A program made the translations under genes and the position numbers. From Ranitomeya imitator (lineage: Eukaryota), in the NCBI RefSeq assembly GCF_032444005.1, contig NC_091282.1, positions 364,126,001-364,190,000 on the forward strand: a stretch of DNA of 64,000 nucleotides. The letters run 5' to 3'. A model generated the notes under the pieces. The model had not been told where the DNA came from and made no database searches. It saw only the letters and a program-made list of their open reading frames with translations. Positions 31,250-62,748 of this stretch are shown here, in pieces (position 1 is the stretch's first letter; each line of letters opens with the position of its first letter).

Positions 31250-31327
31250 TTTTTTGGAAAATCTAAGCAAAATAACAACCGTTATATGGTACTGTAAAAC
31301 AAGGTAGAAGGTGTATATAAACTTCTT

Positions 31328-31830
31328 GAGAATTTAAATCTCCCTTTTTTGTGGGAGACTGAACCAAAACTCAGGCCCAGTGTATATAACATCGCAATCT
31401 AAGTGGCAGAAAGTGGCTGGCTGACATACGACAAACTAACAGAACTGAAGTATATCCACTTTGTGAGAATTTGAATCTCACTTTTTTGGGGGGAGACTGA
31501 ACCAAAGCTCAGGCCCTGTGCATAAAACAACACAATGTAAGTGGCAGAAAGTGGACTGGCTGATATACGACAAACTAACAGGACTGAAGTATATCCACTT
31601 TGTGAGAATTTGAATCTCCTTTTTTTTGGGGAGACTGAACCAAAACTCAGGCCCAGTGTATATAACAACGCAATCTGAGTGGCAGAAAGTGGCTGGCTGA
31701 CATACGACAAACTAACAGGACTGAAGTATGTCCACTTTGTGAGAATTTGAATCTCACTTTTTTGGGGGGAGCCTGAACCAAAACTCAGGCCCAGTGTATA
31801 AAACAACACAATGTAAGTGGCTGGAAGATA
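31328..31830. repeat. About 137-139 bp tandem array in the 5' region of hAT-C, about 3.6 units
   Basis: GAGAATTT.AATCTC.CTTTTTT..GGGAG.CTGAACCAAA.CTCAGGCCC at 31328, 31465, 31604 and 31741. Confidence 0.88.
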
Positions 31831-32238
31831 TTTGAAAAAATACAAGGACTGTAGTACAATTTCAATCTCCCTACAATGATCTCAGCAAAAGTATGGCAGC
31901 AATAAAAAGGACTGCTGCACACAAAAGTGTGGACAAATAAACAAGATAACTGTGCAGAAAGGAGCAACAGGATTTTTGCTTTTAAAAAAGCAGTTGGCTT
32001 GCACAGCAGTGTGCAAACAGCAATGCAGCTATCAGGGAGCCTTATAAGGCAGTCTAATAAGCTACAGAGATGTTGCACAACAATATAGCCTCCACTGTCC
32101 CTGCAAAAAAATGGTGGTGTTGGACAGTGGAAATCGCTACAGCAGAAGTAGTTTGGGGGTTAGTTTTCCCCCCCTAACTATATCCCTTCTTCTGATGAAG
32201 CTGCAGCAACCTCTCCCTATGCTAAGATTGGCAGAAGT

Positions 32239-32383
32239 AAGATGGCGGCCGGCATGCACGCCCCTTTATAGCCCCTTTGACGACGCAGAAAGCAAGCCAA
32301 TCACTGTCATGCCCTTCTGTAAGATGGTGGGGACCGAGACCTATGTCATCACGCTACCCACACTCTGCGTCCTCCTTCATTGG
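32239..32383 (-). promoter_or_regulatory. Putative transposase core promoter of hAT-C
   Basis: On the minus strand: CCAAT (32379-83), inverted CCAAT (32297-301), TATAAA (32265-70) and YY1 consensus GCCGCCATCTT (32239-49). It points toward the transposase ATG and is conserved with hAT-B. Confidence 0.55.
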
Positions 32384-32557
32384 CTGAAAAATGGTGCTAA
32401 AAGCGTCATATGAAATGCGACTTTTGCGCGCAGATCGCCGACCTCATGGCCGATCCCACACTACTAGAATCGGGTCGGGTTTCATGAAACCCGACTTTGC
32501 CGAAAGTCGGCGATTTTTGAATTTGTCCAATCCTTTCCACTCAACCCCAGTCCCGAC

Positions 32558-32934
32558 TCCTCCCGATGCCCTTGCTTGTGTGCATCACATGCACATTGCT
32601 GTGTGTGTGCACTGCTGATAGGCTGAGAGACTGCACCGCCCCACTGTAAATGCGGGAAAGAAAAAAAAATGGAGATCGGCGTTATTTCAGCACAGATCTA
32701 TCTCCCGCTCCCCTCCCCTGTCCACTATAGACTGAAACAGTCTATTAACAATGATAAACAGTTTTAATGTGCAAATCAAGTTAGGCTATTGGTGAACGAA
32801 CAGTTATCGAACAGAAACTCGAACAGTCGAATTTTAAGCAAATTGTTCGAGTTCGTGGAACGACTCGAACACCGCCCAAAATAGCTCGAATTTGAAATTG
32901 GCGAACAGTTCGATTCGAACAACGCTCATCTCTA
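32558..32934 (-). mobile_element. hAT terminal segment (continuation of the 23920-24770 element that hAT-C split)
   Basis: Dense TCGAAC/GTTCG subterminal motifs ending in CGCTCATCTCTA (reverse complement TAGAGATGAGCG) at 32934, followed by GTCCCAAG. Confidence 0.8.
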
Positions 32935-33093
32935 GTCCCAAGCAGAGACTGGGGTATTTGTCCATATTATTGCAATAAGCCAAACATCTCATAGGGTGGG
33001 CAGATAAAAGCCTTTACTTGCTTAAAAAATTGTAAGACTCATTTTAAGTCTGCCCAAAGACATGTAGGACACTCCACAAATGTATGGAAGAAG

Positions 33094-33880
33094 GTAACAT
33101 AGTAACATAGAAAAATAGTTAGCAAGGCCGAAAAAAGACATTTGTTCATCCAGTTCAGCCTATATTCTGTCAGAATAAATCCCCTGATCTACATCTTTCT
33201 AAAGAACCTAATAACTGTAAGATACAATATTGTTACGCTCCAGGAAGACATCCAGGCCTCTCTTGAACCCCTCAACTGAGTTCGCCATCACCACCTAATC
33301 AGGCACGGAATTCCAGATTCTGACTGCCCTAACAGTAAACAATACTCCAGATGCAGAGAATGCCCCCTTGTGATCATCACCTTCCTTGGTATAAACAGAT
33401 CCTCGGAGAGATATTTGTATTGTCCTCTTATATACTTACATATGGTTATTAGATCGCTTCTTAGTCATCTTTTTTCTAGACTGAATAATTCTAATTTTGC
33501 CAATCTCTCTGGGTATTGTAGTTTCCTCATCCCCTTTATGAATTTTGGTGCCCTCCTTCGTATTGCTCTAGTTCCGTTATAACCTTCCTGAGCACCGGTG
33601 CCCAAAACTGTACACAGTACTCCATGTGTGGTCTAACTAGGGATTTGTACAGAGGCAGTATAATGCTCTCATCATGTGTATCCAGACCTCTTGTAATGCA
33701 CTCCCTGATCCTGTTTGCCTTGGCAGCTGCTGCCTGGCACTGGCTGCTCCAGGTAAGTTTATCATTAACTAGGAACCCCATGTCCTTCTCATTGTCAGAT
33801 TCACCCAGTGGTTTCCCATTCAGTATGTAATGGTGACATTGATTCCTTCTACCCATGTGTATAACCTTACATTGACTGCA
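33094..33880 (-). mobile_element. CR1 LINE 3' fragment (copies at about 40647-41433, 48293-49079, 55939-56725)
   Basis: RT C-terminus HYILNGKPLGESDNEKDMGFLVNDKLTWSSQCQAAAAKANRI..CITRG...ILPLYKSLVRPHMEYCVQFWAP, with a (GTAACATA)n 3' tail. Confidence 0.88.
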
Positions 33881-33954
33881 TTACATTGCTTAGTATCATG
33901 TGCAAAAATAGATATTTTACTGTGCACACCTTCTACCCGATCGTTAATAAGTAT

Positions 33955-34387
33955 GTTGAAGATGCTGTGGTCAGACGTGACAAAAGTTAAATTGTTAGGT
34001 TAATGATATGCCTGGCGCCAAATCAACACAGGTGATCATCCCAAGAACACCATCCCCACAGTGAAACATGGTGGTGGTGGCATAATACCGTGAGGATGTT
34101 TTTGGCAGCATCGACATGGAAAATGGTCGAAGTCAAGGAGAAGATGAATAGTGTGAAATACAGGGATATCCTTTAGCAAAACCTGATTGTCTATCAGTTA
34201 TTTGAGATGGGGATGAAGGTTCACCTTCCAACAAGACAATGACCAAAAGCATACTGCTAAAGCAACACTTGAGTGGTTGAAGGGGAAACTTGTAAATGTT
34301 TTGGAGTGGTCTAGTCAACATAAATACCTTAATCCTATTGAGAATCTGTGGACAGACTTGAAGATTCTTGTTCACCAGAGGAAACCA
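33955..34387 (+). pseudogene. Tc1-like (DD34E) transposase fragment (copies at about 41508, 49154, 56800)
   Basis: Across frameshifts: LWSD.TK..L...PKNTIPTVKHGGG...GCF...MN...Y.DIL...FTFQQDND.KHTAK.T.EWL...NVLEW.SQ...LNPIENLW.DLK. Confidence 0.85.
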
Positions 34388-34682
34388 TCCACTCCATGGT
34401 CAAGCCTTATCTGGAATACTGTGTCTAGTTCTGGGGACAACACTTTAAAAAAGACATTGAAAAACTGGAGCAAGATAAGAGAAGAGTTACCAGTATGGTG
34501 AGCGGATTGTAAAGTATATCCTATGAGGATACAGGATTACAGGATATGGGAATGTTTAGCTTGCAAAAAAGAAGACTTAATAGATGTCTTCAAATATCTG
34601 AAGGGATATCACAGTGTAGAGGAATCATTCTTATTCTCTTTTGCCCATGAAAAACAAGAAGCAATGGAATGAAACTGAAAGT
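34388..34682 (+). mobile_element. Second CR1-clade LINE RT C-terminal fragment (copies at about 41941, 49587, 57233)
   Basis: Reads MVKPYLEYCV.FWGQHFKKDIEKLE...VTSMVSGL...SYE...DMGMFSLQKRRL...FKYLKG...RSNGMKL across frameshifts. Confidence 0.7.
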
Positions 34683-34687
34683 AATAT

Positions 34688-35303
34688 ACAGGGTGGTGTA
34701 CCATATTATGGGTGTCATGTCCGAGCATTCCTACATGAACAGTTGTCTGAAAAGTGGATTGGTCTTTGTGGACCCGTTGAATGGCCATCAAGGTCTCCCG
34801 ATTTGACCCCCTTAGACTTTTATCTTTGGGGTCATCTGAAGGCAATTGTCTATACTGTGAAGATACGAGATGTGCAGCATCTGAAACAACGGATACTGGA
34901 AGCCAGTGCTATCATTTCTACTGCAGTGTTGCTATCAGTGTGTCAAGAGTGGGAGAAGCGGGTTACATTGAAAATGCAACACAATGGTCAGCACTTTGAG
35001 CACATTGTATAAGTGGTAATAAACTTATAAATAACTCACGAAAGAATAAAGTTACATTAAAACCAAGCACACCATTGTTTTTCTTGTAAAATTCTCAATA
35101 AGTTTGATGTGTCACATGACCCTCTTCCCATTGGAAAAAATAAAGATGGATCCAAAATGGCTGACTTCAAAATGGCTGCCATGGTCAAAACCCATCTTGA
35201 AAAGCTTTCCTCCTCCCATATACTAATATACCACAAACAGGAAGTTGATATCACCAACCATTCCCATTTTATTTAGGTGTATCCATATAAATGTCCCACC
35301 CTG
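34688..35303 (+). mobile_element. Tc1/mariner-superfamily element 3' half, DD41D (rosa/Visitor)-like (copies at about 42241, 49887, 57533)
   Basis: Q(D>G)GVPYYG..VRAFL.EQ...KWIG..GPVEWPSRSPDLTPLDFYLWG.LK..VY...GQHFEHIV*, with about 40 residues between the second and third acidic positions. Ends in TIR-like GGTGTATCCATATAAATGTCCCACCCTG. Confidence 0.72.
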
Positions 35304-35837
35304 TGCAATGTTATCAGTAATATAATTTAAAGTAAAAACTTGTAACATAAAAAACAAAATGGTAAAATGCCCTGCCAAAATATTAATTTGTTTTTTATTA
35401 GAATATGTAAAAAAAATCACATTATGCCTACACATTTTGGAACTGTGAATTTGTGTAATTTATTTTGTCTAGTTTTTGGTGATTTTATGGTGTGTTTTTT
35501 ATTTGTACCTTTTTCTTAATTTTAAAATTTATTTTAAATGTTTTTGCCTGTTTTTTATGTTTACCATTGTGAGTGGAGTTGAGAGTTTCCAAATGTTTTA
35601 GATTGATTTATCATTTGCAACCTGAAAAAAAGCTGCAAAGTTTGTTGCAAATGTACATTTTCCCACATAGTGATTTTATGTACATCAGAAACATTTTGCA
35701 AAAATGTGTAACTTTTTGCACTAAAAATAATAAAAATGATTCTTGACTTTGCCCATGATTCATTAATGTACATCATTATGAGGAACTTGGTGCAAAAAAA
35801 GTATACCACAAGGCAAAAAAAGAAAAGTGAGGAAGAA

Positions 35838-36430
35838 GAAGAAGCCAGTGGCAAAACGTGCGTTGGGATGAGAGGACGTTACTCCAGGATCCTGACTACA
35901 AGGTGAATCGGTCTCCTATTATTGCGGACACGATCCTTACTACTTACGGGCACTTTCTTTGATTCTATCTAAAGTTATTTGGTGGGTTACTTCTCACTAG
36001 TAGATATTACTATACAAACTGTTGGGCCAAGCATTGTATACATGTTGCCATTTTTACGTGTGGTATGCATAATACGTTTCAGTATTCTCCTTGCACTCCC
36101 GCGTTATCTGATCGATATTATACCTTTATTCGCTATGGCTGTGATCTAATCATTTAATTCATTACTCATATTGAGGTAGTTACTAAGCAAATGACCGAAA
36201 CGTTTTGATATTGTGATATGTGAAGCACTAGTCACTTTATAGGGGCTACCAGTTTTGCAAGTTTGTGATTCAGTCCTACTTAAGCATTCAAATATTGTAC
36301 CTCTACGGAGTGTTAGTTTCGGGTAGCCTGGACCGTCCTCTATGTGAAGCACACTGCTATGTTATTTTTTATTCTTGCATTTTAAATCTTTATGAATAAA
36401 AGTTAATTTTTAACCTTCCTTTTGTACCTT
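35838..36430 (+). mobile_element. Probable Penelope pLTR remnant (copies at about 43391, 51037, 58683)
   Basis: Starts with a decayed hammerhead 3' half GAAGAAGCCAGTGGCAAAACGTGCGTTGGG (compare 8015-8043). A splice donor AAG|GTGAAT follows at 35902, then an AT-rich tail with AATAAA. Same layout as 8007-8518. Confidence 0.5.
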
Positions 36431-36638
36431 AAATGGGATGCGTTTATAACATCTTTTAATATATTGTATGTGATTTTTCCAAAAATTTTAACTTTTTACT
36501 TTTGCATCCCATATAGCTTAAATAAGTTTTTTATCTTCAATTAGTTCATCTGTAACTGTTTTCATTATTTTTACTTAAGGAAAGTACGGTAAATGGGGTG
36601 AGAGAATTTGAAGATGGGGACAAGCGTTTATCACTTAA

Positions 36639-37255
36639 GGTACCTTCACACATAACGATATCGTTAACGATATCGTTGCTTTTTGTGACGTAGCAACGAT
36701 ATCATTAAGGAAATCGCTATGTGTGACAGCGACCAACGATCAGGCCCCTGCTGTGATGTCGTTGGTCGCTGAACAAAGTCCAGAACTTTATTTCGTTGCT
36801 GGATCTCCCGTGGACATCGCTGGATCGGCGTGTGTGACACCGATCCAGCGATGTCTTCACTGGTAACCAGGGTAAACATCGGGTTACTAAGCGCAGGGCC
36901 GCGCTTAGTAACCCGATGTTTACCCTGGTTACCAGCGTAAAAGTAAAAAAAAAAAAACACTACATACTTACCTACCGCTGTCTGTCCCCGGCGCTGTGCT
37001 CTGCACTCCGCCTGCACTGGCTGTGAGCGTCGGTCAGCCGGAAAGCAGAGCGGTGACGTCACCGCTCTGCTTTCCGACCGCTGTGCTCACAGCCAGTACA
37101 GGAGGAGTGCAGAGAAGCAGAGCGCCGGGGACAGACAGCGGTAGGTAAGTATGTAGAGCTGTCTGTGTGACAGCTCTGCAGCGACCAAACAGCGACGCTG
37201 CAGCGATCCGGATCGTTGTCGGTATCGCTGCAGCGTCGCTTAATGTGAAGGGGCC
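36639..37255. mobile_element. Kolobok/T2-type palindromic MITE, copy 1 (617 bp)
   Basis: TTAA|GGTACCTTCACA ... TGTGAAGGGGCC|TTTA. Internal long palindromes, e.g. GGTAACCAGGGTAAACATCGGGTTACTAAGCGC..GCGCTTAGTAACCCGATGTTTACCCTGGTTACC. Confidence 0.85.
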
Positions 37256-37542
37256 TTTACTATACTGTATATTCAGGTTCTGAAATTATCCCAATAAGGC
37301 CACATAGTCATAAATGTTTCATTTTGTATCTCAAAATACGTTCCATGTCAGTAATTAGTAATTCAGTCTCCATTTTTTATTAGACATATATGGTTATATG
37401 GTATATGGTTACACAATTGTTAAGAAATTATATAGTATGTTTACTTCTATATAGCATGTTTACTTTACTTTGGAATGTGCTTATATGCTTTAAGAAATTT
37501 GTTAAGAGGTCATATCTGCCACAAATAAATTATTTGGTTCTT

Positions 37543-38574
37543 CTACCCCAAAGTTTTTTTTATAGCTGTCTTCATCTCTTTATTTCGCAAGGTATAAATG
37601 ATTGGGTTCAGCATTGGTGATATGACTGTGTAGAACACCATAACCACCTCATCAGCCTGAAAAGTTTTGGAGGGTCTCATATAAATAAAAACACAAGGTC
37701 CAAAGAAAAAAGTTACCACTGTAAGATGAGAAGCACAGGTTGAAAAGGCTTTGCGTCGTCCTTCCACTGTTCGTATTTTAAAGATAGCCTTAGCAATGCC
37801 AATATAGGAAATTAAGACAGTCAGAAAGCAGCCTAGTGATACGATACCACTATTGGCCACTATCATAGCATCAATCATGGCTGTATCAGTGCATGCAAGC
37901 CTGATTAATGGTGGGACATCGCAAAAAAAACTGTTAATTTCATTTGGGCCACAGAATGGCAAACCCATTGTTAGTGTTGTCTGGATGTTAGAATGAACAA
38001 AACCAATAGCCCAAGTTGCTGCCACCATCCATAGACAAAGCTGTTTACTCATTATGGTGGAATATTGCAAGGGTTTGCATATAGCTACATAGCGATCATA
38101 TGCCATAGCTGTGAAAAGAAAACATTCTGCACAGGCGAAGAAGTGGAAGAAGTATAGTTGAGTGATGCAGCCATTGAATGTAATAGTTTTTCTTTTAAAA
38201 AAAAAATCAATCAACATCTTGGGTACAGTTACACTCGAGTAACAGAGATCAATGAAAGAGAGCTTACCAAGGAAGAAATACATTGGATTATGAAGACGAT
38301 AATCTGCTCTGATGGTCAACATGATTAAAATGTTCCCGCTGAGAAGTAATATATAGGCCAACAGAAAGATGGAAAAGACAAAGTACTGAAGTCTTGGATT
38401 AAAAGCAAAAATCACAAAAACAAATTCTGTTACTTCTGTTATGTTACATGTCTCCACAGTAGACTTTAAAGAACTGGATTTCGTAGCATCTACATGATGA
38501 TCCGATACGTTATAAAATGAGTCCAGTCCCCCAAAGTTTATCGACAAAGGTTCTACTGTACAGTTGTGCCACAT
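37543..38574 (-). CDS. Olfactory receptor, class II (family 4-like), copy 1, 343 aa, altered C-terminus
   Basis: Single-exon 7TM ORF with SGN, LHNPMYFFL, MAYDRYVAICKPLQY, FFCD.PPL..LAC, ISY, KAFSTCASHL and PMLNPIIYTLRN. An extra base in a T run gives ...IKKTLG* instead of ...IKKLWGRRTK*. Confidence 0.93.
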   Translation of the reverse strand: MWHNCTVEPLSINFGGLDSFYNVSDHHVDATKSSSLKSTVETCNITEVTEFVFVIFAFNPRLQYFVFSIFLLAYILLLSGNILIMLTIRADYRLHNPMYFFLGKLSFIDLCYSSVTVPKMLIDFFFKRKTITFNGCITQLYFFHFFACAECFLFTAMAYDRYVAICKPLQYSTIMSKQLCLWMVAATWAIGFVHSNIQTTLTMGLPFCGPNEINSFFCDVPPLIRLACTDTAMIDAMIVANSGIVSLGCFLTVLISYIGIAKAIFKIRTVEGRRKAFSTCASHLTVVTFFFGPCVFIYMRPSKTFQADEVVMVFYTVISPMLNPIIYTLRNKEMKTAIKKTLG

Positions 38575-41500
38575 AGTTGAAAAGAAAAAATGTGTAAATC
38601 TAATGGATTAAAATGTAAAACTCCTTTTTTATTTTGTGCTTGTCCATCAAAAAGAACCATGTAGACAGCCTAACATCTTTAGAAAAAGTAAGATAAACAT
38701 TGATAAATCAGTTATTTAGCTAAAAGAATTAACTAGATAATAGATACAAAATCAACAAATGTTAAAACTAGTAAAGAACCTACAATTTACCATGTATATA
38801 GGAAGAATTTATTATTTTGACCTCACAATCTTATACTTTAGTATTGTCACTCGATGTATATTTTCAGTGATCCCACCACGGATATTTCTTAGTTTTTTTA
38901 CTTATAAATGTTTAAAAAAAAGCTGGAAAAATTGTAAAAATATTAAGTGGTAGTGGCACAAAAATTTACATATAAAATATAAAAATGGAAATTCAGCAGT
39001 ATAAACATAGAGACAAGCGAAACACAACAAAATTATGATGTTTCAAAATTGTACCTTTGGAGACAAATACATGAACAGATCCAGCAAGAGTCCCCTTTCA
39101 CACTTACAATGTTCTCATACATGTTCTATCCGTGTTTGTCTATTGGGCTGTTTAGTGAAAAGCAAATTGGTGACATTCTAATTGCAGTCTGACTTTCATA
39201 GGGGAATTTCATAGGATTTTTTTCATATGTGAATACTAATGAAAGATTTAACACACGCATGCACGCACACACACGCACACACACGTAGTTTGTACCCACC
39301 ACGAGTACAGTTTTTTGGGGGGAGCCTGAACCAAAACTCAGGCCCAGTGTATAAAACAACACAATGTAAGTGGCTGGAAGATATTTGAAAAAATACAAGG
39401 ACTGTAGTACAATTTCAATCTCCCTACAATGATCTCAGCAAAAGTATGGCAGCAATAAAAAGGACTGCTGCACACAAAAGTGTGGACAAATAAACAAGAT
39501 AACTGTGCAGAAAGGAGCAACAGGATTTTTGCTTTTAAAAAAGCAGTTGGCTTGCACAGCAGTGTGCAAACAGCAATGCAGCTATCAGGGAGCCTTATAA
39601 GGCAGTCTAATAAGCTACAGAGATGTTGCACAACAATATAGCATCCACTGTCCCTGCAAAAAAATGGTGGTGTTGGACAGTGGAAATCGCTACAGCAGAA
39701 GTAGTTTGGGGGTTAGTTTTCCCCCCCTAACTATATCCCTTCTTCTGATGAAGCTGCAGCAACCTCTCCCTATGCTAAGATTGGCAGAAGTAAGATGGCG
39801 GCCGGCATGCACGCCCCTTTATAGCCCCTTTGACGACGCAGAAAGCAAGCCAATCACTGTCATGCCCTTCTGTAAGATGGTGGGGACCGAGACCTATGTC
39901 ATCACGCTACCCACACTCTGCGTCCTCCTTCATTGGCTGAAAAATGGTGCTAAAAGCGTCATATGAAATGCGACTTTTGCGCGCAGATCGCCGACCTCAT
40001 GGCCGATCCCACACTACTAGAATCGGGTCGGGTTTCATGAAACCCGACTTTGCCGAAAGTCGGCGATTTTTGAATTTGTCCAATCCTTTCCACTCAACCC
40101 CAGTCCCGACTCCTCCCGATGCCCTTGCTTGTGTGCATCACATGCACATTGCTGTGTGTGTGCACTGCTGATAGGCTGAGAGACTGCACCGCCCCACTGT
40201 AAATGCGGGAAAGAAAAAAAAATGGAGATCGGCGTTATTTCAGCACAGATCTATCTCCCGCTCCCCTCCCCTGTCCACTATAGACTGAAACAGTCTATTA
40301 ACAATGATAAACAGTTTTAATGTGCAAATCAAGTTAGGCTATTGGTGAACGAACAGTTATCGAACAGAAACTCGAACAGTCGAATTTTAAGCAAATTGTT
40401 CGAGTTCGTGGAACGACTCGAACACCGCCCAAAATAGCTCGAATTTGAAATTGGCGAACAGTTCGATTCGAACAACGCTCATCTCTAGTCCCAAGCAGAG
40501 ACTGGGGTATTTGTCCATATTATTGCAATAAGCCAAACATCTCATAGGGTGGGCAGATAAAAGCCTTTACTTGCTTAAAAAATTGTAAGACTCATTTTAA
40601 GTCTGCCCAAAGACATGTAGGACACTCCACAAATGTATGGAAGAAGGTAACATAGTAACATAGAAAAATAGTTAGCAAGGCCGAAAAAAGACATTTGTTC
40701 ATCCAGTTCAGCCTATATTCTGTCAGAATAAATCCCCTGATCTACATCTTTCTAAAGAACCTAATAACTGTAAGATACAATATTGTTACGCTCCAGGAAG
40801 ACATCCAGGCCTCTCTTGAACCCCTCAACTGAGTTCGCCATCACCACCTAATCAGGCACGGAATTCCAGATTCTGACTGCCCTAACAGTAAACAATACTC
40901 CAGATGCAGAGAATGCCCCCTTGTGATCATCACCTTCCTTGGTATAAACAGATCCTCGGAGAGATATTTGTATTGTCCTCTTATATACTTACATATGGTT
41001 ATTAGATCGCTTCTCAGTCATCTTTTTTCTAGACTGAATAATTCTAATTTTGCCAATCTCTCTGGGTATTGTAGTTTCCTCATCCCCTTTATGAATTTTG
41101 GTGCCCTCCTTTGTATTGCTCTAGTTCCGTTATAACCTTCCTGAGCACCGGTGCCCAAAACTGTACACAGTACTCCATGTGTGGTCTAACTAGGGATTTG
41201 TACAGAGGCAGTATAATGCTCTCATCATGTGTATTTAGACCTCTTGTAATGCACTCCCTGATCCTGTTTGCCTTGGCAGCTGCTGCCTGGCACTGGCTGC
41301 TCCAGGTAAGTTTATCATTAACTAGGAACCCCATGTCCTTCTCATTGTCAGATTCACCCAGTGGTTTCCCATTCAGTATGTAATGGTGACATTGATTCCT
41401 TCTACCCATGTGTATAACCTTACATTGACTGCATTACATTGCTTAGTATCATGTGCAAAAGTAGATATTTTACTGTGCACACCTTCTACCCGATCGTTAA

Positions 41501-51837: not shown

Positions 51838-52548
51838 GGTACCTTCACACATAACGATATCGTTAACGATATCGTTGCTTTTTGTGACGTAGCAACGATA
51901 TCATTAAGGAAATCGCTATGTGTGACAGCGACCAACGATCAGGCCCCTGCTGTGATGTCGTTGGTCGCTGAACAAAGTCCAGAACTTTATTTCGTTGCTG
52001 GATCTCCCGTGGACCGATCCAGCGATGTCTTCACTGGTAACCAGGGTAAACATCGGGTTACTAAGCGCAGGGCCGCGCTTAGTAACCCGATGTTTACCCT
52101 GGTTACCAGCGTAAAAGTAAAAAAAAAAAAACACTACATACTTACCTACCGCTGTCTGTCCCCGGCGCTGTGCTCTGCACTCCGCCTGCACTGGCTGTGA
52201 GCGTCGGTCAGCCGGAAAGCAGAGCGGTGACGTCACCGCTCTGCTTTCCGGCCGCTGTGCTCACAGCCAATACAGGAGGAGTGCAGAGAAGCAGAGCGCC
52301 GGGGACAGACAGCGGTAGGTAAGTATGTAGTGTTTGTTTTTTTTTTACTTTTATGCTGGTAACCAGGGTAAACATCGGGTTACTAAGTGCGGCCCTGGGC
52401 TTAGTAACCCGATGTTTACCCTGGTTACCGGCATCGTTGGTCGCTGTAGAGCTGTCTGTGTGACAGCTCTGCAGCGACCAAACAGCGACGCTGCAGCGAT
52501 CCGGATCGTTGTCGGTATCGCTGCAGCGTCGCTTAATGTGAAGGGGCC
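51838..52548. mobile_element. Kolobok/T2-type MITE, copy 3
   Basis: Same termini and TSD as copy 2. Confidence 0.85.
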
Positions 52549-52822
52549 TTTACTATACTGTATATTCAGGTTCTGAAATTATCCCAATAAGGCCACATAG
52601 TCATAAATGTTTCATTTTGTATCTCAAAATACGTTCCATGTCAGTAATTAGTAATTCAGTCTCCATTTTTTATTAGACATATATGGTTATATGGTATATG
52701 GTTACACAATTGTTAAGAAATTATATAGTATGTTTACTTCTATATAGCATGTTTACTTTACTTTGGAATGTGCTTATATGCTTAAAGAAATTTGTTAAGA
52801 GGTCATATCTGCCACAAATAAA

Positions 52823-53866
52823 TTATTTGGTTCTTCTACCCCAAAGTTTTTTTATAGCTGTCTTCATCTCTTTATTTCGCAAGGTATAAATGATTGGGTT
52901 CAGCATTGGTGATATGACTGTGTAGAACACCATAACCACCTCATCAGCCTGAAAAGTTTTGGAGGGTCTCATATAAATAAAAACACAAGGTCCAAAGAAA
53001 AAAGTTACCACTGTAAGATGAGAAGCACAGGTTGAAAAGGCTTTGCGTCGTCCTTCCACTGTTCGTATTTTAAAGATAGCCTTAGCAATGCCAATATAGG
53101 AAATTAAGACAGTCAGAAAGCAGCCTAGTGATACGATACCACTATTGGCCACTATCATAGCATCAATCATGGCTGTATCAGTGCATGCAAGCCTGATTAA
53201 TGGTGGGACATCGCAAAAAAAACTGTTAATTTCATTTGGGCCACAGAATGGCAAACCCATTGTTAGTGTTGTCTGGATATTAGAATGAACAAAACCAATA
53301 GCCCAAGTTGCTGCCACCATCCATAGACAAAGCTGTTTACTCATTATGGTGGAATATTGCAAGGGTTTGCATATAGCTACATAGCGATCATATGCCATAG
53401 CTGTGAAAAGAAAACATTCTGCACAGGCGAAGAAGTGGAAGAAGTATAGTTGAGTGATGCAGCCATTGAATGTAATAGTTTTTCTTTTAAAAAAAAAATC
53501 AATCAACATCTTGGGTACAGTTACACTCGAGTAACAGAGATCAATGAAAGAGAGCTTACCAAGGAAGAAATACATTGGATTATGAAGACGATAATCTGCT
53601 CTGATGGTCAACATGATTAAAATGTTCCCGCTGAGAAGTAATATATAGGCCAACAGAAAGATGGAAAAGACAAAGTACTGAAGTCTTGGATTAAAAGCAA
53701 AAATCACAAAAACAAATTCTGTTACTTCTGTTATGTTACATGTCTCCACAGTAGACTTTAAAGAACTGGATTTCGTAGCATCTACATGATGATCCGATAC
53801 GTTATAAAATGAGTCCAGTCCCCCAAAGTTTATCGACAAAGGTTCTACTGTACAGTTGTGCCACAT
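52823..53866 (-). CDS. Olfactory receptor, class II (family 4-like), copy 3, 347 aa
   Basis: Identical protein to copy 2. Confidence 0.95.
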   Translation of the reverse strand: MWHNCTVEPLSINFGGLDSFYNVSDHHVDATKSSSLKSTVETCNITEVTEFVFVIFAFNPRLQYFVFSIFLLAYILLLSGNILIMLTIRADYRLHNPMYFFLGKLSFIDLCYSSVTVPKMLIDFFFKRKTITFNGCITQLYFFHFFACAECFLFTAMAYDRYVAICKPLQYSTIMSKQLCLWMVAATWAIGFVHSNIQTTLTMGLPFCGPNEINSFFCDVPPLIRLACTDTAMIDAMIVANSGIVSLGCFLTVLISYIGIAKAIFKIRTVEGRRKAFSTCASHLTVVTFFFGPCVFIYMRPSKTFQADEVVMVFYTVISPMLNPIIYTLRNKEMKTAIKKLWGRRTK

Positions 53867-56800
53867 AGTTGAAAAGAAAAAATGTGTAAATCTAATGGAT
53901 TAAAATGTAAAACTCCTTTTTTATTTTGTGCTTGTCCATCAAAAAGAACCATGTAGACAGCCTAACATCTTTAGAAAAAGTAAGATAAACATTGATAAAT
54001 CAGTTATTTAGCTAAAAGAATTAACTAGATAATAGATACAAAATCAACAAATGTTAAAACTAGTAAAGAACCTACAATTTACCATGTATATAGGAAGAAT
54101 TTATTATTTTGACCTCACAATCTTATACTTTAGTATTGTCACTCGATGTATATTTTCAGTGATCCCACCACGGATATTTCTTAGTTTTTTTACTTATAAA
54201 TGTTTAAAAAAAAGCTGGAAAAATTGTAAAAATATTAAGTGGTAGTGGCACAAAAATTTACATATAAAATATAAAAATGGAAATTCAGCAGTATAAACAT
54301 AGAGACAAGCGAAACACAACAAAATTATGATGTTTCAAAATTGTACCTTTGGAGACAAATACATGAACAGATCCAGCAAGAGTCCCCTTTCACACTTACA
54401 ATGTTCTCATACATGTTCTATCCGTGTTTGTCTATTGGGCTGTTTAGTGAAAAGCAAACTGGTGACATTCTAATTGCAGTCTGACTTTCATAGGGGAATT
54501 TCATAGGATTTTTTTCATATGTGAATACTAATGAAAGATTTAACACACGCATGCACGCACACACACGCACACACACGTAGTTTGTACCCACCACGAGTAC
54601 AGTTTTTTGGGGGGAGCCTGAACCAAAACTCAGGCCCAGTGTATAAAACAACACAATGTAAGTGGCTGGAAGATATTTGAAAAAATACAAGGACTGTAGT
54701 ACAATTTCAATCTCCCTACAATGATCTCAGCAAAAGTATGGCAGCAATAAAAAGGACTGCTGCACACAAAAGTGTGGACAAATAAACAAGATAACTGTGC
54801 AGAAAGGAGCAACAGGATTTTTGCTTTTAAAAAAGCAGTTGGCTTGCACAGCAGTGTGCAAACAGCAATGCAGCTATCAGGGAGCCTTATAAGGCAGTCT
54901 AATAAGCTACAGAGATGTTGCACAACAATATAGCCTCCACTGTCCCTGCAAAAAAATGGTGGTGTTGGACAGTGGAAATCGCTACAGCAGAAGTAGTTTG
55001 GGGGTTAGTTTTCCCCCCCTAACTATATCCCTTCTTCTGATGAAGCTGCAGCAACCTCTCCCTATGCTAAGATTGGCAGAAGTAAGATGGCGGCCGGCAT
55101 GCACGCCCCTTTATAGCCCCTTTGACGACGCAGAAAGCAAGCCAATCACTGTCATGCCCTTCTGTAAGATGGTGGGGACCGAGACCTATGTCATCACGCT
55201 ACCCACACTCTGCGTCCTCCTTCATTGGCTGAAAAATGGTGCTAAAAGCGTCATATGAAATGCGACTTTTGCGCGCAGATCGCCGACCTCATGGCCGATC
55301 CCACACTACTAGAATCGGGTCGGGTTTCATGAAACCCGACTTTGCCGAAAGTCGGCGATTTTTGAATTTGTCCAATCCTTTCCACTCAACCCCAGTCCCG
55401 ACTCCTCCCGATGCCCTTGCTTGTGTGCATCACATGCACATTGCTGTGTGTGTGCACTGCTGATAGGCTGAGATACTGCACCGCCCCACTGTAAATGCGG
55501 GAAAGAAAAAAAAATGGAGATCGGCGTTATTTCAGCACAGATCTATCTCCCGCTCCCCTCCCCTGTCCACTATAGACTGAAACAGTCTATTAACAATGAT
55601 AAACAGTTTTAATGTGCAAATCAAGTTAGGCTATTGGTGAACGAACAGTTATCGAACAGAAACTCGAACAGTCGAATTTTAAGCAAATTGTTCGAGTTCG
55701 TGGAACGACTCGAACACCGCCCAAAATAGCTCGAATTTGAAATTGGCGAACAGTTCGATTCGAACAACGCTCATCTCTAGTCCCAAGCAGAGACTGGGGT
55801 ATTTGTCCATATTATTGCAATAAGCCAAACATCTCATAGGGTGGGCAGATAAAAGCCTTTACTTGCTTAAAAAATTGTAAGACTCATTTTAAGTCTGCCC
55901 AAAGACATGTAGGACACTCCACAAATGTATGGAAGAAGGTAACATAGTAACATAGAAAAATAGTTAGCAAGGCCGAAAAAAGACATTTGTTCATCCAGTT
56001 CAGCCTATATTCTGTCAGAATAAATCCCCTGATCTACATCTTTCTAAAGAACCTAATAACTGTAAGATACAATATTGTTACGCTCCAGGAAGACATCCAG
56101 GCCTCTCTTGAACCCCTCAACTGAGTTCGCCATCACCACCTAATCAGGCACGGAATTCCAGATTCTGACTGCCCTAACAGTAAACAATACTCCAGATGCA
56201 GAGAATGCCCCCTTGTGATCATCACCTTCCTTGGTATAAACAGATCCTCGGAGAGATATTTGTATTGTCCTCTTATATACTTACATATGGTTATTAGATC
56301 GCTTCTCAGTCATCTTTTTTCTAGACTGAATAATTCTAATTTTGCCAATCTCTCTGGGTATTGTAGTTTCCTCATCCCCTTTATGAATTTTGGTGCCCTC
56401 CTTTGTATTGCTCTAGTTCCGTTATAACCTTCCTGAGCACCGGTGCCCAAAACTGTACACAGTACTCCATGTGTGGTCTAACTAGGGATTTGTACAGAGG
56501 CAGTATAATGCTCTCATCATGTGTATTTAGACCTCTTGTAATGCACTCCCTGATCCTGTTTGCCTTGGCAGCTGCTGCCTGGCACTGGCTGCTCCAGGTA
56601 AGTTTATCATTAACTAGGAACCCCATGTCCTTCTCATTGTCAGATTCACCCAGTGGTTTCCCATTCAGTATGTAATGGTGACATTGATTCCTTCTACCCA
56701 TGTGTATAACCTTACATTGACTGCATTACATTGCTTAGTATCATGTGCAAAAGTAGATATTTTACTGTGCACACCTTCTACCCGATCGTTAATAAGTATG

Positions 56801-59483
56801 TTGAAGATGCTGTGGTCAGACGTGACAAAAGTTAAATTGTTAGGTTAATGATATGCCTGGCGCCAAATCAACACAGGTGATCATCCCAAGAACACCATCC
56901 CCACAGTGAAACATGGTGGTGGTGGCATAATACCGTGAGGATGTTTTCGGCAGCATCGACATGGAAAATGGTCGAAGTCAAGGAGAAGATGAATAGTGTG
57001 AAATACAGGGATATCCTTTAGCAAAACCTGATTGTCTATCAGTTATTTGAGATGGGGATGAAGGTTCACCTTCCAACAAGACAATGACCAAAAGCATACT
57101 GCTAAAGCAACACTTGAGTGGTTGAAGGGGAAACTTGTAAATGTTTTGGAGTGGTCTAGTCAACATAAATACCTTAATCCTATTGAGAATCTGTGGACAG
57201 ACTTGAAGATTCTTGTTCACCAGAGGAAACCATCCACTCCATGGTCAAGCCTTATCTGGAATACTGTGTCTAGTTCTGGGGACAACACTTTAAAAAAGAC
57301 ATTGAAAAACTGGAGCAAGATAAGAGAAGAGTTACCAATATGGTGAGCGGATTGTAAAGTATATCCTATGAGGATACAGGATTACAGGATATGGGAATGT
57401 TTAGCTTGCAAAAAAGAAGACTTAATAGATGTCTTCAAATATCTGAAGGGATATCACAGTGTAGAGGAATCATCCTTATTCTCTTTTGCCCATGAAAAAC
57501 AAGAAGCAATGGAATGAAACTGAAAGTAATATACAGGGTGGTGTACCATATTATGGGTGTCAGGTCCGAGCATTCCTACATGAACAGTTGTCTGAAAAGT
57601 GGATTGGTCTTTGTGGACCCGTTGAATGGCCATCAAGGTCTCCCGATTTGACCCCCTTAGACTTTTATCTTTGGGGTCATCTGAAGGCAATTGTCTATAC
57701 TGTGAAGATACGAGATGTGCAGCATCTGAAACAACGGATACTGGAAGCCAGTGCTATCATTTCTACTGCAGTGTTGCTATCAGTGTGTCAAGAGTGGGAG
57801 AAGCGGGTTACATTGAAAATGCAACACAATGGTCAGCACTTTGAGCACATTGTATAAGTGGTAATAAACTTATAAATAACTCACCAAAGAATAAAGTTAC
57901 ATTAAAACCAAGCACACCATTGTTTTTCTTGTAAAATTCTCAATAAGTTTGATGTGTCACATGACCCTCTTCCCATTGGAAAAAATAAAGATGGATCCAA
58001 AATGGCTGACTTCAAAATGGCTGCCATGGTCAAAACCCATCTTGAAAAGCTTTCCTCCTCCCATATACTAATATACCACAAACAGGAAGTTGATATCACC
58101 AACCATTCCCATTTTATTTAGGTGTATCCATATAAATGTCCCACCCTGTGCAATGTTATCAGTAATATAATTTAAAGTAAAAACTTGTAACATAAAAAAC
58201 AAAATTGTAAAATGCCCTGCCAAAATATTAATTTGTTTTTTATTAGAATATGTAAAAAAAATCACATTATGCCTACACATTTTGGAACTGTGAATTTGTG
58301 TAATTTATTTTGTCTAGTTTTTGGTGATTTTATGGTGTGTTTTTTATTTGTACCTTTTTCTTAATTTTAAAATGTATTTTAAATGTTTTTGCCTGTTTTT
58401 CATGTTTACCATTGTGAGTGGAGTTGAGAGTTTCCAAATGTTTTAGATTGATTTATCATTTGCAACCTGAAAAAAAGCTGCAAAGTTTGTTGCAAATGTA
58501 CATTTTCCCACATAGTGATTTTATGTACATCAGAAACATTTTGCAAAAATGTGTAACTTTTTGCACTAAAAATAATAAAAATGATTCTTGACTTTGCCCA
58601 TGATTCATTAATGTACATCATTATGAGGAACTTGGTGCAAAAAAAGTATACCACAAGGCAAAAAAAGAAAAGTGAGGAAGAAGAAGAAGCCAGTGGCAAA
58701 ACGTGCGTTGGGATGAGAGGACGTTACTCCAGGATCCTGACTACAAGGTGAATCGGTCTCCTATTATTGCGGACACGATCCTTACTACTTACGGGCACTT
58801 TCTTTGATTCTATCTAAAGTTATTTGGTGGGTTACTTCTCACTAGTAGATATTACTATACAAACTGTTGGGCCAAGCATTGTATACATGTTGCCATTTTT
58901 ACGTGTGGTATGCATAATACGTTTCAGTATTCTCCTTGCACTCCCGCGTTATCTGATCGATATTATACCTTTATTCGCTATGGCTGTGATCTAATCATTT
59001 AATTCATTACTCATATTGAGGTAGTTACTAAGCAAATGACCGAAATGTTTTGATATTGTGATATGTGAAGCACTAGTCACTTTATAGGGGCTACCAGTTT
59101 TGCAAGTTTGTGATTCAGTCCTACTTAAGCATTCAAATATTGTACCTCTACGGAGTGTTAGTTTCGGGTAGCCTGGACCGTCCTCTATGTGAAGCACACT
59201 GCTATGTTATTTTTTATTCTTGCATTTTAAATCTTTATGAATAAAAGTTAATTTTTAACCTTCCTTTTGTACCTTAAATGGGATGCGTTTATAACATCTT
59301 TTAATATATTGTATGTGATTTTTCCAAAAATGTTAACTTTTTACTTTTGCATCCCATATAGCTTAAATAAGTTTTTTATCTTCAATTAGTTCATCTGTAA
59401 CTGTTTTCATTATTTTTACTTAAGGAAAGTACGGTAAATGGGGTGAGAGAATTTGAAGATGGGGACAAGCGTTTATCACTTAA

Positions 59484-60194
59484 GGTACCTTCACACATAA
59501 CGATATCGTTAACGATATCGTTGCTTTTTGTGACGTAGCAACGATATCATTAAGGAAATCGCTATGTGTGACAGCGACCAACGATCAGGCCCCTGCTGTG
59601 ATGTCGTTGGTCGCTGAACAAAGTCCAGAACTTTATTTCGTTGCTGGATCTCCCGTGGACCGATCCAGCGATGTCTTCACTGGTAACCAGGGTAAACATC
59701 GGGTTACTAAGCGCAGGGCCGCGCTTAGTAACCCGATGTTTACCCTGGTTACCAGCGTAAAAGTAAAAAAAAAAAAACACTACATACTTACCTACCGCTG
59801 TCTGTCCCCGGCGCTGTGCTCTGCACTCCGCCTGCACTGGCTGTGAGCGTCGGTCAGCCGGAAAGCAGAGCGGTGACGTCACCGCTCTGCTTTCCGGCCG
59901 CTGTGCTCACAGCCAATACAGGAGGAGTGCAGAGAAGCAGAGCGCCGGGGACAGACAGCGGTAGGTAAGTATGTAGTGTTTGTTTTTTTTTTACTTTTAT
60001 GCTGGTAACCAGGGTAAACATCGGGTTACTAAGTGCGGCCCTGGGCTTAGTAACCCGATGTTTACCCTGGTTACCGGCATCGTTGGTCGCTGTAGAGCTG
60101 TCTGTGTGACAGCTCTGCAGCGACCAAACAGCGACGCTGCAGCGATCCGGATCGTTGTCGGTATCGCTGCAGCGTCGCTTAATGTGAAGGGGCC
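59484..60194. mobile_element. Kolobok/T2-type MITE, copy 4
   Basis: Same termini and TSD as copy 2. Confidence 0.85.
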
Positions 60195-60468
60195 TTTACT
60201 ATACTGTATATTCAGGTTCTGAAATTATCCCAATAAGGCCACATAGTCATAAATGTTTCATTTTGTATCTCAAAATACGTTCCATGTCAGTAATTAGTAA
60301 TTCAGTCTCCATTTTTTATTAGACATATATGGTTATATGGTATATGGTTACACAATTGTTAAGAAATTATATAGTATGTTTACTTCTATATAGCATGTTT
60401 ACTTTACTTTGGAATGTGCTTATATGCTTAAAGAAATTTGTTAAGAGGTCATATCTGCCACAAATAAA

Positions 60469-61512
60469 TTATTTGGTTCTTCTACCCCAAAGTTTTTTTA
60501 TAGCTGTCTTCATCTCTTTATTTCGCAAGGTATAAATGATTGGGTTCAGCATTGGTGATATGACTGTGTAGAACACCATAACCACCTCATCAGCCTGAAA
60601 AGTTTTGGAGGGTCTCATATAAATAAAAACACAAGGTCCAAAGAAAAAAGTTACCACTGTAAGATGAGAAGCACAGGTTGAAAAGGCTTTGCGTCGTCCT
60701 TCCACTGTTCGTATTTTAAAGATAGCCTTAGCAATGCCAATATAGGAAATTAAGACAGTCAGAAAGCAGCCTAGTGATACGATACCACTATTGGCCACTA
60801 TCATAGCATCAATCATGGCTGTATCAGTGCATGCAAGCCTGATTAATGGTGGGACATCGCAAAAAAAACTGTTAATTTCATTTGGGCCACAGAATGGCAA
60901 ACCCATTGTTAGTGTTGTCTGGATATTAGAATGAACAAAACCAATAGCCCAAGTTGCTGCCACCATCCATAGACAAAGCTGTTTACTCATTATGGTGGAA
61001 TATTGCAAGGGTTTGCATATAGCTACATAGCGATCATATGCCATAGCTGTGAAAAGAAAACATTCTGCACAGGCGAAGAAGTGGAAGAAGTATAGTTGAG
61101 TGATGCAGCCATTGAATGTAATAGTTTTTCTTTTAAAAAAAAAATCAATCAACATCTTGGGTACAGTTACACTCGAGTAACAGAGATCAATGAAAGAGAG
61201 CTTACCAAGGAAGAAATACATTGGATTATGAAGACGATAATCTGCTCTGATGGTCAACATGATTAAAATGTTCCCGCTGAGAAGTAATATATAGGCCAAC
61301 AGAAAGATGGAAAAGACAAAGTACTGAAGTCTTGGATTAAAAGCAAAAATCACAAAAACAAATTCTGTTACTTCTGTTATGTTACATGTCTCCACAGTAG
61401 ACTTTAAAGAACTGGATTTCGTAGCATCTACATGATGATCCGATACGTTATAAAATGAGTCCAGTCCCCCAAAGTTTATCGACAAAGGTTCTACTGTACA
61501 GTTGTGCCACAT
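60469..61512 (-). CDS. Olfactory receptor, class II (family 4-like), copy 4, 347 aa (retains native upstream region)
   Basis: Identical protein to copies 2 and 3. Confidence 0.95.
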   Translation of the reverse strand: MWHNCTVEPLSINFGGLDSFYNVSDHHVDATKSSSLKSTVETCNITEVTEFVFVIFAFNPRLQYFVFSIFLLAYILLLSGNILIMLTIRADYRLHNPMYFFLGKLSFIDLCYSSVTVPKMLIDFFFKRKTITFNGCITQLYFFHFFACAECFLFTAMAYDRYVAICKPLQYSTIMSKQLCLWMVAATWAIGFVHSNIQTTLTMGLPFCGPNEINSFFCDVPPLIRLACTDTAMIDAMIVANSGIVSLGCFLTVLISYIGIAKAIFKIRTVEGRRKAFSTCASHLTVVTFFFGPCVFIYMRPSKTFQADEVVMVFYTVISPMLNPIIYTLRNKEMKTAIKKLWGRRTK

Positions 61513-62748
61513 AGTTGAAAAGAAAAAATGTGTAAATCTAATGGATTAAAATGTAAAACTCCTTTTTTATTTTGTGCTTGTCCATCAAAAAGAACCATGT
61601 AGACAGCCTAACATCTTTAGAAAAAGTAAGATAAACATTGATAAATCAGTTATTTAGCTAAAAGAATTAACTAGATAATAGATACAAAATCAACAAATGT
61701 TAAAACTAGTAAAGAACCTACAATTTACCATGTATATAGGAAGAATTTATTATTTTGACCTCACAATCTTATACTTTAGTATTGTCACTCGATGTATATT
61801 TTCAGTGATCCCACCACGGATATTTCTTAGTTTTTTTACTTATAAATGTTTAAAAAAAAGCTGGAAAAATTGTAAAAATATTAAGTGGTAGTGGCACAAA
61901 AATTTACATATAAAATATAAAAATGGAAATTCAGCAGTATAAACATAGAGACAAGCGAAACACAACAAAATTATGATGTTTCAAAATTGTACCTTTGGAG
62001 ACAAATACATGAACAGATCCAGCAAGAGTCCCCTTTCACACTTACAATGTTCTCATACATGTTCTATCCGTGTTTGTCTATTGGGCTGTTTAGTGAAAAG
62101 CAAACTGGTGACATTCTAATTGCAGTCTGACTTTCATAGGGGAATTTCATAGGATTTTTTTCATATGTGAATACTAATGAAAGAGTTAACACACGCATGC
62201 ACGCACACACACGCACGCACACGTAGTTTGTACCCACCACGAGTACAGTTATACAATAAAATTAAGTGCTTGTTTTCACCCTTATCTTTGCTCATATTTC
62301 ATTAAGAGAGGCTATCTACATTTTCTATATTCATGGATGCTTACAAAATAATCATCTTCCATAACCCACGGGATCCATGAGAGTGACAAAAGGTAAGTAT
62401 ACAGTACCTTCAGTGGCTTAGCTGCTTTTGACACCATCCATGGCTACAAAAAAATATTTACATCACTAGACAAATCTTTCAAGGACTCTAATTTCTATCA
62501 AAAGAAATTCAATACAATATCATGTCTTGACAGTCTACAATTTATTCAACCACACGAACACATATAGCATTAACATGTCATGAGTCATGACAGAGTATTG
62601 TGAAATAATTTGTTTCCCGAAGCTGGTCATCACATACTATACAAATTGAACAAAGAGTAAAAGCATGGAAGACAATAATGTACTACTACTTTATTGTTGT
62701 AACTGGTGTTAATATAATCTTTTTCATAGATTTACATATCAGTTCTAA

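What the first reader, a model, noticed from the sequence alone, without database searches (positions are those of the whole stretch)
31758..62250. Very recent four-copy tandem amplification of an intact olfactory receptor cassette, with a base-resolved non-homologous junction
Seen: four head-to-tail units (7553, 7646, 7646 and 7646 bp), each with an intact OR. All three junctions read GAGTACAG|TTTTTTGGGGGG. The two parental sites (31758, inside a hAT-C repeat, and 62249-62250, in unique DNA) share only TT. Inference: the first duplication was non-homologous (microhomology or template switch), and later copies arose by unequal crossing-over between units. This would capture OR gene birth in progress and is probably a copy-number polymorphism.
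Basis: partly seen in the sequence, partly recalled or inferred. Interest (0 to 1): 0.75.

Follow-up and report, generated by a model that had tools for sequence, protein, structure and literature searches.

The report
Four-copy smell-receptor gene array in frog
In this poison-frog assembly one otherwise conserved, mostly single-copy smell-receptor gene sits in four nearly identical head-to-tail copies joined by the same non-homologous junction, an ordinary though cleanly resolved gene-family expansion whose copy number I could not check against reads.

Summary
There are four head-to-tail units at 31758-62248 (7553, 7646, 7646 and 7646 bp). All three junctions read GAGTACAG|TTTTTTGGGGGG, and the two parental sites share only TT. 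Each unit carries an open olfactory-receptor ORF on the minus strand.

The variants fit a ladder tree, U1,(U2,(U3,U4)), with no conflicting site. Divergence is 0.29%, 0.16% and 0.05%. That rejects a one-step origin and dates the steps to roughly 0.1-2 million years: recent, but not necessarily still in progress.

The left breakpoint lies in a 138-bp repeat array at the 5' end of a decayed hAT element. The right breakpoint lies 24 bp from a 37-bp alternating purine/pyrimidine tract.

The receptor belongs to a deeply conserved amphibian family-4 group, 80-89% identical from caecilians to frogs. In four other dendrobatoid species the matching sequence has a single accession, so the amplification looks specific to Ranitomeya imitator.

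Only 736 bp of native upstream DNA is copied, so whether copies 1-3 have a promoter is open.

This is a clean new instance of a known process.

The parts
31758..39310 (.). Unit 1 (7553 bp), the most diverged copy
   Evidence: 16 private substitutions, a 25-bp insertion (36814-36838), a 119-bp gap after 37151, and an extra T at 37554
39311..46956 (.). Unit 2 (7646 bp)
   Evidence: 7 private substitutions; 11 differences to U3
46957..54602 (.). Unit 3 (7646 bp)
   Evidence: no private substitution; 4 differences to U4
54603..62248 (.). Unit 4 (7646 bp). The only copy whose receptor gene keeps the native DNA further upstream (right flank).
   Evidence: 4 private substitutions, two of them at 62185 and 62217
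39303..39322 (.). Junction 1, GAGTACAG|TTTTTTGGGGGG
46949..46968 (.). Junction 2, identical to junction 1
54595..54614 (.). Junction 3, identical to junction 1
31750..31769 (.). Left parental breakpoint (31757|31758; ambiguous over 2 bp because of TT), inside the 138-bp repeat array
62241..62260 (.). Right parental breakpoint (62248|62249; TT at 62249-62250 is the shared microhomology)
37543..38574 (-). Olfactory receptor ORF copy 1, 343 aa. Its tail reads KKTLG* because of a T8-versus-T7 run at 37554.
   Evidence: Orthologue tails read KKLWGRR.., so this tail is derived, or a homopolymer sequencing error.
45177..46220 (-). Olfactory receptor ORF copy 2, 347 aa
52823..53866 (-). Olfactory receptor ORF copy 3, 347 aa, protein identical to copy 2
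60469..61512 (-). Olfactory receptor ORF copy 4, 347 aa, protein identical to copy 2
31313..31821 (.). 138-bp tandem repeat (3.7 copies) 5' of the hAT transposase remnant. The left breakpoint falls at the T6G6 motif of its last copy.
26627..32301 (-). Decayed hAT element copy with its transposase ORF in pieces. Its 5' 544 bp (31758-32301) are part of every unit (also 39311-39854, 46957-47500, 54603-55146).
   Evidence: collinear at about 80% with the copy at 16552-23919; homology ends at 32301
44390..44783 (.). About 400-bp palindromic element 3' of the receptor gene, present in every unit. Both larger U1 indels lie in it or beside it.
62189..62225 (.). 37-bp alternating purine/pyrimidine tract, 24 bp from the right breakpoint. 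It is present at the end of every unit.

Best explanation
This is a real, lineage-specific tandem amplification of a single olfactory receptor gene in the mimic poison frog.

Step 1 (inferred from the junction). One non-homologous event, either end joining or a replication template switch, joined a site 736 bp upstream of the receptor's start codon (62248) to a site 7.6 kb away (31758). That second site lies in the 138-bp repeats at the 5' end of a dead hAT element. The result was a two-copy direct repeat with the junction GAGTACAG|TTTTTT.

Steps 2 and 3 (inferred from identical junctions and the ladder tree). Misaligned homologous exchange between units, or the equivalent homologous template switch, added copies one at a time. 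The newest pair is at the right end.

State of the gene. All copies encode the same receptor over residues 1-340. It is a member of a deeply conserved amphibian family-4 orthogroup.

Likely effect (inferred, untested). Each olfactory neuron picks one receptor gene. Extra copies would therefore raise the share of neurons that express this receptor, but only for copies that carry a working promoter. Only copy 4 keeps the native DNA beyond -736. Copies 1-3 have the hAT 5' end there instead.
For: - Structure and junctions.
- No homology between the parental sites beyond TT.
- The variants look like real mutations: 20 transitions to 10 transversions, 6 in CpG context, and only one homopolymer-length difference.
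- The patterns are fully tree-compatible (16/7/0/4 private, 3 shared by U3+U4, none conflicting). They do not fit two stacked haplotypes: no site supports U1+U3|U2+U4, and U1-U2 at 23 differences is far larger than U2-U3 at 10.
- Divergences are graded at 0.29%, 0.16% and 0.053%.
- Two of the four U4-private sites fall in the last 117 bp (p = 0.0014).
- Receptor identity: Pfam 7tm_4 at 1e-55.
- Orthologues are 80-89% identical over the C-terminal half from Microcaecilia to Eleutherodactylus, with the next paralogues at 66%.
- 347-aa orthologues with the same N-terminal extension exist in R. variabilis, D. tinctorius, P. terribilis and Anomaloglossus. Each of these sequences has a single RefSeq accession in the 90% clusters (Anomaloglossus also has the GenBank twin of the same gene).
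- The 347-aa and 343-aa proteins of this window are both on record at NCBI on a 1.25-Gb sequence.
- There is no amino-acid substitution among the copies where about 3 would be expected if neutral (P about 0.04).
Against: - No read-level evidence. Copy number, heterozygosity and even the linkage of the units rest on the assembly alone.
- Only one sample holds most of the stretch, and it may be the source of the assembly.
- Under simple unequal crossing-over the interior units should be mosaics of U1-like and U4-like sequence. Apart from the last 117 bp no mosaic is seen, which requires crossovers close to the unit's end.
- Expression of any copy is unknown.
Confidence: 0.7

Rival explanations
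1. Assembly miscount. The junction and a duplication exist, but the true array has fewer (2-3) or more copies, and the assembler mis-threaded near-identical units or mixed the two haplotypes.
For: Units differ by as few as 4 positions in 7646. No reads could be laid. A note on the same genome reports a tandem duplication missing from a second assembly. The earlier R. imitator draft had many spurious duplicates (10.1101/706671).
Against: The window lies on a very long sequence: more than 179 Mb precede it and the encoding record is 1.25 Gb, so it is not that fragmented draft. There are no Ns. The variants have a mutation-like spectrum and a conflict-free tree that does not match stacked allelic pairs. 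U1 is distinguished by three indels and U2 by seven private sites. Reads of 15 kb or more would therefore anchor every unit except the U3/U4 pair, which still differ at four sites.
Confidence: 0.15
2. One-step multi-copy origin, followed by uneven homogenisation through gene conversion. For example, a circular copy of the 7.6-kb segment was closed at the TT microhomology, replicated as a multimer and recombined back into the locus.
For: Identical junctions and equal unit lengths in U2-U4. A circle closed at the same junction would give exactly this structure.
Against: Private changes of 16/7/0/4 reject equal ages (chi-square 20.6, 3 df). Three sites are shared by U3+U4 only. Conversion tracts should leave patchy patterns, but the shared and private sites are interleaved along the unit.
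Confidence: 0.1
3. Transposon-driven duplication: aberrant hAT transposition, or recombination between two hAT copies, made the repeat.
For: The left breakpoint is inside a hAT element. Three hAT copies lie in the same orientation in the 32 kb to the left.
Against: The break is inside the 138-bp repeat array and not at an element end. There is no hAT sequence at the right parental site, no 8-bp target duplication and no terminal inverted repeat at the junction. The local transposase ORF is in pieces.
Confidence: 0.03

Closest known systems
Birth-and-death growth of vertebrate olfactory receptor clusters by tandem duplication, and OR copy-number variants described in mammals
   Same: A single-exon OR gene copied head to tail with a few kb of flank. 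Young copies are nearly identical. Homologous misalignment is expected to change copy number further.
   Different: Here the founding junction is preserved to the base, and the order of the steps can be read from about 30 variants. The amplified gene is not a fast-turnover OR: it belongs to a group kept at 80-89% identity across amphibians and is mostly single-copy elsewhere. Polymorphism is not shown.
Non-recurrent tandem duplications formed by end joining or replicative template switching (NHEJ, MMEJ, FoSTeS/MMBIR) and then expanded by non-allelic homologous recombination
   Same: Head-to-tail orientation, 2-bp microhomology, no inserted bases and no extended homology at the parental sites. 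Both breakpoints lie next to unusual DNA: T6G6 inside a tandem repeat, and a 37-bp alternating purine/pyrimidine tract.
   Different: The mechanism cannot be assigned from a single junction, because 2 bp is within chance. The expected mosaic interior units are not seen, except possibly in the last 117 bp.
Mouse Olfr1509 (MOR244-3, OR4E2), the copper-dependent (methylthio)methanethiol receptor
   Same: It is the best-characterised relative found here. It is 57% identical over 301 residues, and His105, Cys109 and Asn202 (the proposed copper site, PMC7256108) align with H144, C148 and N241 of the frog protein.
   Different: The same triad occurs in 185 of 241 family-4 relatives fetched, so it says little about the ligand. 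Orthology to OR4E2 in particular is not established: the C-terminal half scores better with OR4S2/4Q2-like proteins. The frog protein has a 39-residue N-terminal extension.

Membership tests
Vertebrate olfactory receptor (class A GPCR, Pfam 7tm_4) | Match to the OR family profile above its curated threshold | tested here: met
   PF13853 E = 1.3e-55, 189.6 bits against a cut-off of 27, covering profile positions 1-276 of 280
Vertebrate olfactory receptor (class A GPCR, Pfam 7tm_4) | Hallmark motifs (LHxPMYFFL, MAYDRYVAICxPL, KAFSTCxSH, PMLNPxIY) in one uninterrupted coding exon | tested here: met
   Read directly in the translations. All four copies are open from ATG to stop.
Vertebrate olfactory receptor (class A GPCR, Pfam 7tm_4) | A usable start codon | tested here: met
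   The canonical ATG is GTG (V40) in all copies. The upstream ATG and the 347-aa length are kept in four other dendrobatoid species, which argues that the longer ORF is the real one.
Vertebrate olfactory receptor (class A GPCR, Pfam 7tm_4) | Expression in olfactory neurons from its own promoter | not testable with these tools
The motif scan upstream was at chance level.
Non-homologous (end-joining or template-switch) tandem duplication | Direct orientation, with a junction that joins the two ends of the unit | tested here: met
Non-homologous (end-joining or template-switch) tandem duplication | No extended homology between the two parental sites | tested here: met
   only TT is shared, and BLAST finds no similarity between the unit end or right flank and the left flank
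Array expansion by unequal homologous exchange | All junctions identical, and new units of equal length | tested here: met
Array expansion by unequal homologous exchange | Interior units are mosaics of their neighbours | tested here: inconclusive
   only the last 117 bp (sites 7609 and 7641, U1=U2=U3, U4 different) fits. Elsewhere U2 and U3 carry no U1-type block.
Array expansion by unequal homologous exchange | Copy number varies among individuals | not testable with these tools
   No second individual or assembly could be read.
hAT transposon-mediated rearrangement | Breakpoint at an element terminus with an 8-bp target duplication, or hAT copies at both breakpoints | tested here: not met

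The most novel reading that the evidence does not exclude
The array is a still-segregating copy-number variant, specific to R. imitator, of one of the most conserved amphibian olfactory receptors. In three of the four copies the native distal upstream DNA has been replaced by the CCAAT/TATA-bearing 5' end of a hAT element. If those copies are chosen and transcribed in olfactory neurons, this would be a natural experiment on how promoter context and gene dosage set the number of neurons that express a receptor.
Probability: 0.12. Interest if true: 0.6.

Novelty: new member of a known kind. Interest (0 to 1): 0.3.

Why it matters
Tandem duplication is the textbook route by which smell-receptor families grow, but founding junctions are usually erased by time. 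Here one junction, three steps and about 30 dated variants are all readable.

The amplified gene is unusual for an OR: it is strongly conserved and mostly single-copy across amphibians. If reads confirm the array, it offers a small, well-defined system. It could be used to ask whether young OR copies are expressed when they take only 736 bp of upstream DNA with them, and whether copy number varies among populations of a frog with well-studied behaviour.

It does not change what is known about how such families evolve.

Tried and rejected
I searched the receptor in pieces beside them (45180-45713 and 45753-46220) or through database orthologues.
A second R. imitator assembly's copy (P0243, on a 30,417-bp contig) could therefore not be read.
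- An exact search for the junction in metagenome contigs found nothing, as expected.
- The sigma-70 promoter scan is meaningless for a frog and is disregarded.
- The O/E-site scan upstream of the gene gave 2 near-matches where about 1 is expected, so no inference was drawn.
- The search for hAT terminal inverted repeats gave no convincing pair. The element's exact ends stay undefined.
- The copper-site triad H/C/N is conserved but common in family 4. I rejected it as evidence for a thiol ligand.
- Stacked haplotypes as the source of four units: rejected on the variant patterns.
Full report
**Observation**

The array is exactly as described. The 20-mer GAGTACAGTTTTTTGGGGGG occurs three times (39303, 46949, 54595). 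Its left half occurs once more at 62241, and its right half once more at 31758, with a diverged repeat copy at 31482.

This defines four units:
- U1 31758-39310, 7553 bp
- U2 39311-46956, 7646 bp
- U3 46957-54602, 7646 bp
- U4 54603-62248, 7646 bp

U2, U3 and U4 align without gaps. U1 differs in length by a 25-bp insertion, a 119-bp gap and one extra T. There are no Ns in the window. BLAST of a unit against both flanks shows no further partial copy.

**Junction**

The left parental site reads ..GAATCTCAC|TTTTTTGGGGGG. The right parental site reads ..CACGAGTACAG|TTATACAAT. Only TT is shared, there are no inserted bases, and 60 bp on each side show no similarity. For a random blunt join, two or more shared bases are expected about 16% of the time. 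The microhomology therefore does not distinguish end joining from template switching.

Both sites lie next to unusual DNA.
- The left break is at a T6G6 run in the last copy of a 138-bp tandem repeat (31313-31821).
- The right break is 24 bp from a 37-bp alternating purine/pyrimidine tract (62189-62225).

**The left flank**

The region 26627-32301 is collinear, at about 80% identity, with another copy at 16552-23919. The ORFs of these copies carry zf-BED and the hAT dimerisation domain. The local transposase is broken into pieces.

Homology between the copies ends at 32301, just beyond a CCAAT/TATA-like stretch. The first 544 bp of every unit are therefore the 5' end of a dead hAT element on the minus strand. 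I found no terminal inverted repeats or target duplication. The right parental site has no hAT sequence. The transposon is thus the place of breakage, not the agent.

**History of the copies**

Thirty substitution columns fall into only four patterns: 16 private to U1, 7 to U2, 4 to U4 and 3 shared by U3+U4. None conflict. The spectrum (20 transitions, 10 transversions, 6 in CpG context) is that of real mutation and not of sequencing error.

Pairwise divergence:

| Comparison | Divergence |
|---|---|
| U1 versus the rest | 0.29% |
| U2 versus U3/U4 | 0.16% |
| U3 versus U4 | 0.053% |

Equal ages are rejected (16/7/0/4 private changes, chi-square 20.6, 3 df), so the array grew in steps.

With 1e-9 substitutions per site per year, the rate assumed for another dendrobatid (PMC13522351), the steps date to about 1.4, 0.8 and 0.27 My. 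Rates of 0.8-3e-9 give about 0.1-2 My overall.

These divergences are at or below the nucleotide diversity reported for a related poison frog (0.27-0.31%, same paper). Polymorphism is therefore plausible, but it is not shown.

Two of the four U4-private changes lie in the last 117 bp (p = 0.0014). This is what unequal exchange predicts, because every interior unit inherits its junction-side end from U1. Elsewhere the expected mosaics are not seen.

Both larger U1 indels lie in or beside a roughly 400-bp palindrome 3' of the gene.
- The 119-bp indel is flanked by TGTAG.
- The 25-bp indel is one arm of a small hairpin, so it is probably a deletion in the ancestor of U2-U4.

**The gene**

Each unit has an ORF on the minus strand that matches the olfactory receptor profile at 1e-55. 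Among the copies the CDS shows only two differences:
- one synonymous change (codon 196);
- a T8-versus-T7 run at 37554, which gives U1 the tail KKTLG* instead of KKLWGRRTK*.

Orthologues end in KKLWGRR-like tails. The U1 tail is therefore derived, or it is a homopolymer sequencing error.

The canonical start codon is GTG in all four copies, and the ORF runs 39 codons further upstream to an ATG. The same 347-aa form, with V at position 40, is annotated in Ranitomeya variabilis, Dendrobates tinctorius, Phyllobates terribilis and Anomaloglossus baeobatrachus. The extension is therefore old and presumably translated.

**Relatives**

The C-terminal half is 80-89% identical to one protein each in Eleutherodactylus, Pseudophryne, Hyperolius, Bufo, Bombina, Spea, Ascaphus, Pelodytes and the caecilian Microcaecilia. 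The next relatives drop to 66%. That is unusually strong conservation for an OR.

In the 90% clusters, each of the four other dendrobatoid species is represented by one sequence with a single RefSeq accession. A few non-dendrobatoid frogs (Pelobates, Mixophyes) have two.

The window's own 347-aa and 343-aa proteins are on record at NCBI on a 1.25-Gb sequence. A near-identical R. imitator protein from another assembly lies on a 30,417-bp contig that I could not fetch. That match supports the organism named by earlier notes of this scan.

R. imitator differs from R. variabilis at 12 of 347 residues, 7 of them derived in R. imitator. All of these changes predate the amplification.

The closest characterised receptor is mouse Olfr1509/OR4E2, at 57% identity. 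Its proposed copper ligands His105, Cys109 and Asn202 (PMC7256108) are conserved. However, 185 of 241 family-4 relatives share them, so this says nothing firm about the ligand.

**How it would work**

An olfactory neuron expresses one receptor gene (established knowledge of the system). Additional functional copies should therefore enlarge the neuron population that carries this receptor.

Whether copies 1-3 are functional is open. The unit includes only 736 bp upstream of the ATG. Beyond that point they have the junction and the hAT 5' end in the same orientation. Copy 4 alone keeps the native right flank.

A likely splice acceptor lies about 100 bp before the ATG, which suggests a 5' non-coding exon at an unknown position.

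There is no amino-acid substitution among the copies where about 3 are expected under neutrality. This is only weak evidence of constraint (P about 0.04).

**What could not be done**

- The run search showed that only one sample, possibly the source of the assembly, holds most of the stretch. A second organism holds about a quarter of its words.

Real copy number, heterozygosity, polymorphism and expression therefore remain untested.

**Verdict**

The mechanistic reading is largely supported from the sequence alone. The age claim is softened, and the 'polymorphism' and 'birth in progress' claims remain open.

This is a clean, probably species-specific example of a well-known process, made somewhat more interesting by the identity of the gene. 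I confirmed only its geometry.

Noticed in passing
window 39311-39854 (also 46957-47500, 54603-55146; original at 31758-32301): The hAT 5' end carried by each unit lies in the same orientation as the receptor gene. It holds a CCAAT box and a TATA-like CTATAAA (minus strand, around 39818-39824), about 1.25 kb upstream of the ATG of the preceding unit's receptor. Only the geometry was checked, not promoter activity.
   Followed up: partly
window 9372-12087, 16552-23919, 26627-32301: Three hAT transposase-bearing copies lie in the same (minus) orientation within 32 kb. They are about 80% identical to one another, and each is flanked by long tandem-repeat arrays with periods of 107-277 bp. The copy at 17015-20464 keeps two long ORFs (538 and 489 aa) with hAT dimerisation and zf-BED domains. 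Homology between copies stops at a promoter-like CCAAT/TATA stretch and not at recognisable inverted repeats. They may be an old segmental triplication instead of three separate insertions.
   Followed up: partly
window 46103-46105 (codon 40; same codon in all four copies): The canonical start codon of this receptor is GTG, and the ORF begins 39 codons upstream. The extension carries two extra N-glycosylation motifs and is kept at the same length in five dendrobatoid species. Other frogs and a caecilian start at the canonical position.
   Followed up: yes
window 44390-44783 and equivalents in the other units: A roughly 400-bp near-perfect palindrome (91.5% self-complementary) lies about 400 bp 3' of the receptor's stop codon. 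It is built from repeated GGTAACCAGGGTAAACATCGGGTTACTAAG-like arms. The 119-bp and 25-bp differences between U1 and the other units lie in it or beside it, which suggests palindrome instability.
   Followed up: partly
receptor residues 149, 232, 312, 319, 325 (protein P0235): Five of the seven substitutions derived in R. imitator relative to R. variabilis and the outgroups lie in the otherwise very conserved receptor core. One (V149A) is next to Cys148, the residue aligned with the proposed copper ligand Cys109 of mouse Olfr1509. All of them predate the amplification. No rate test with DNA was possible.
   Followed up: partly
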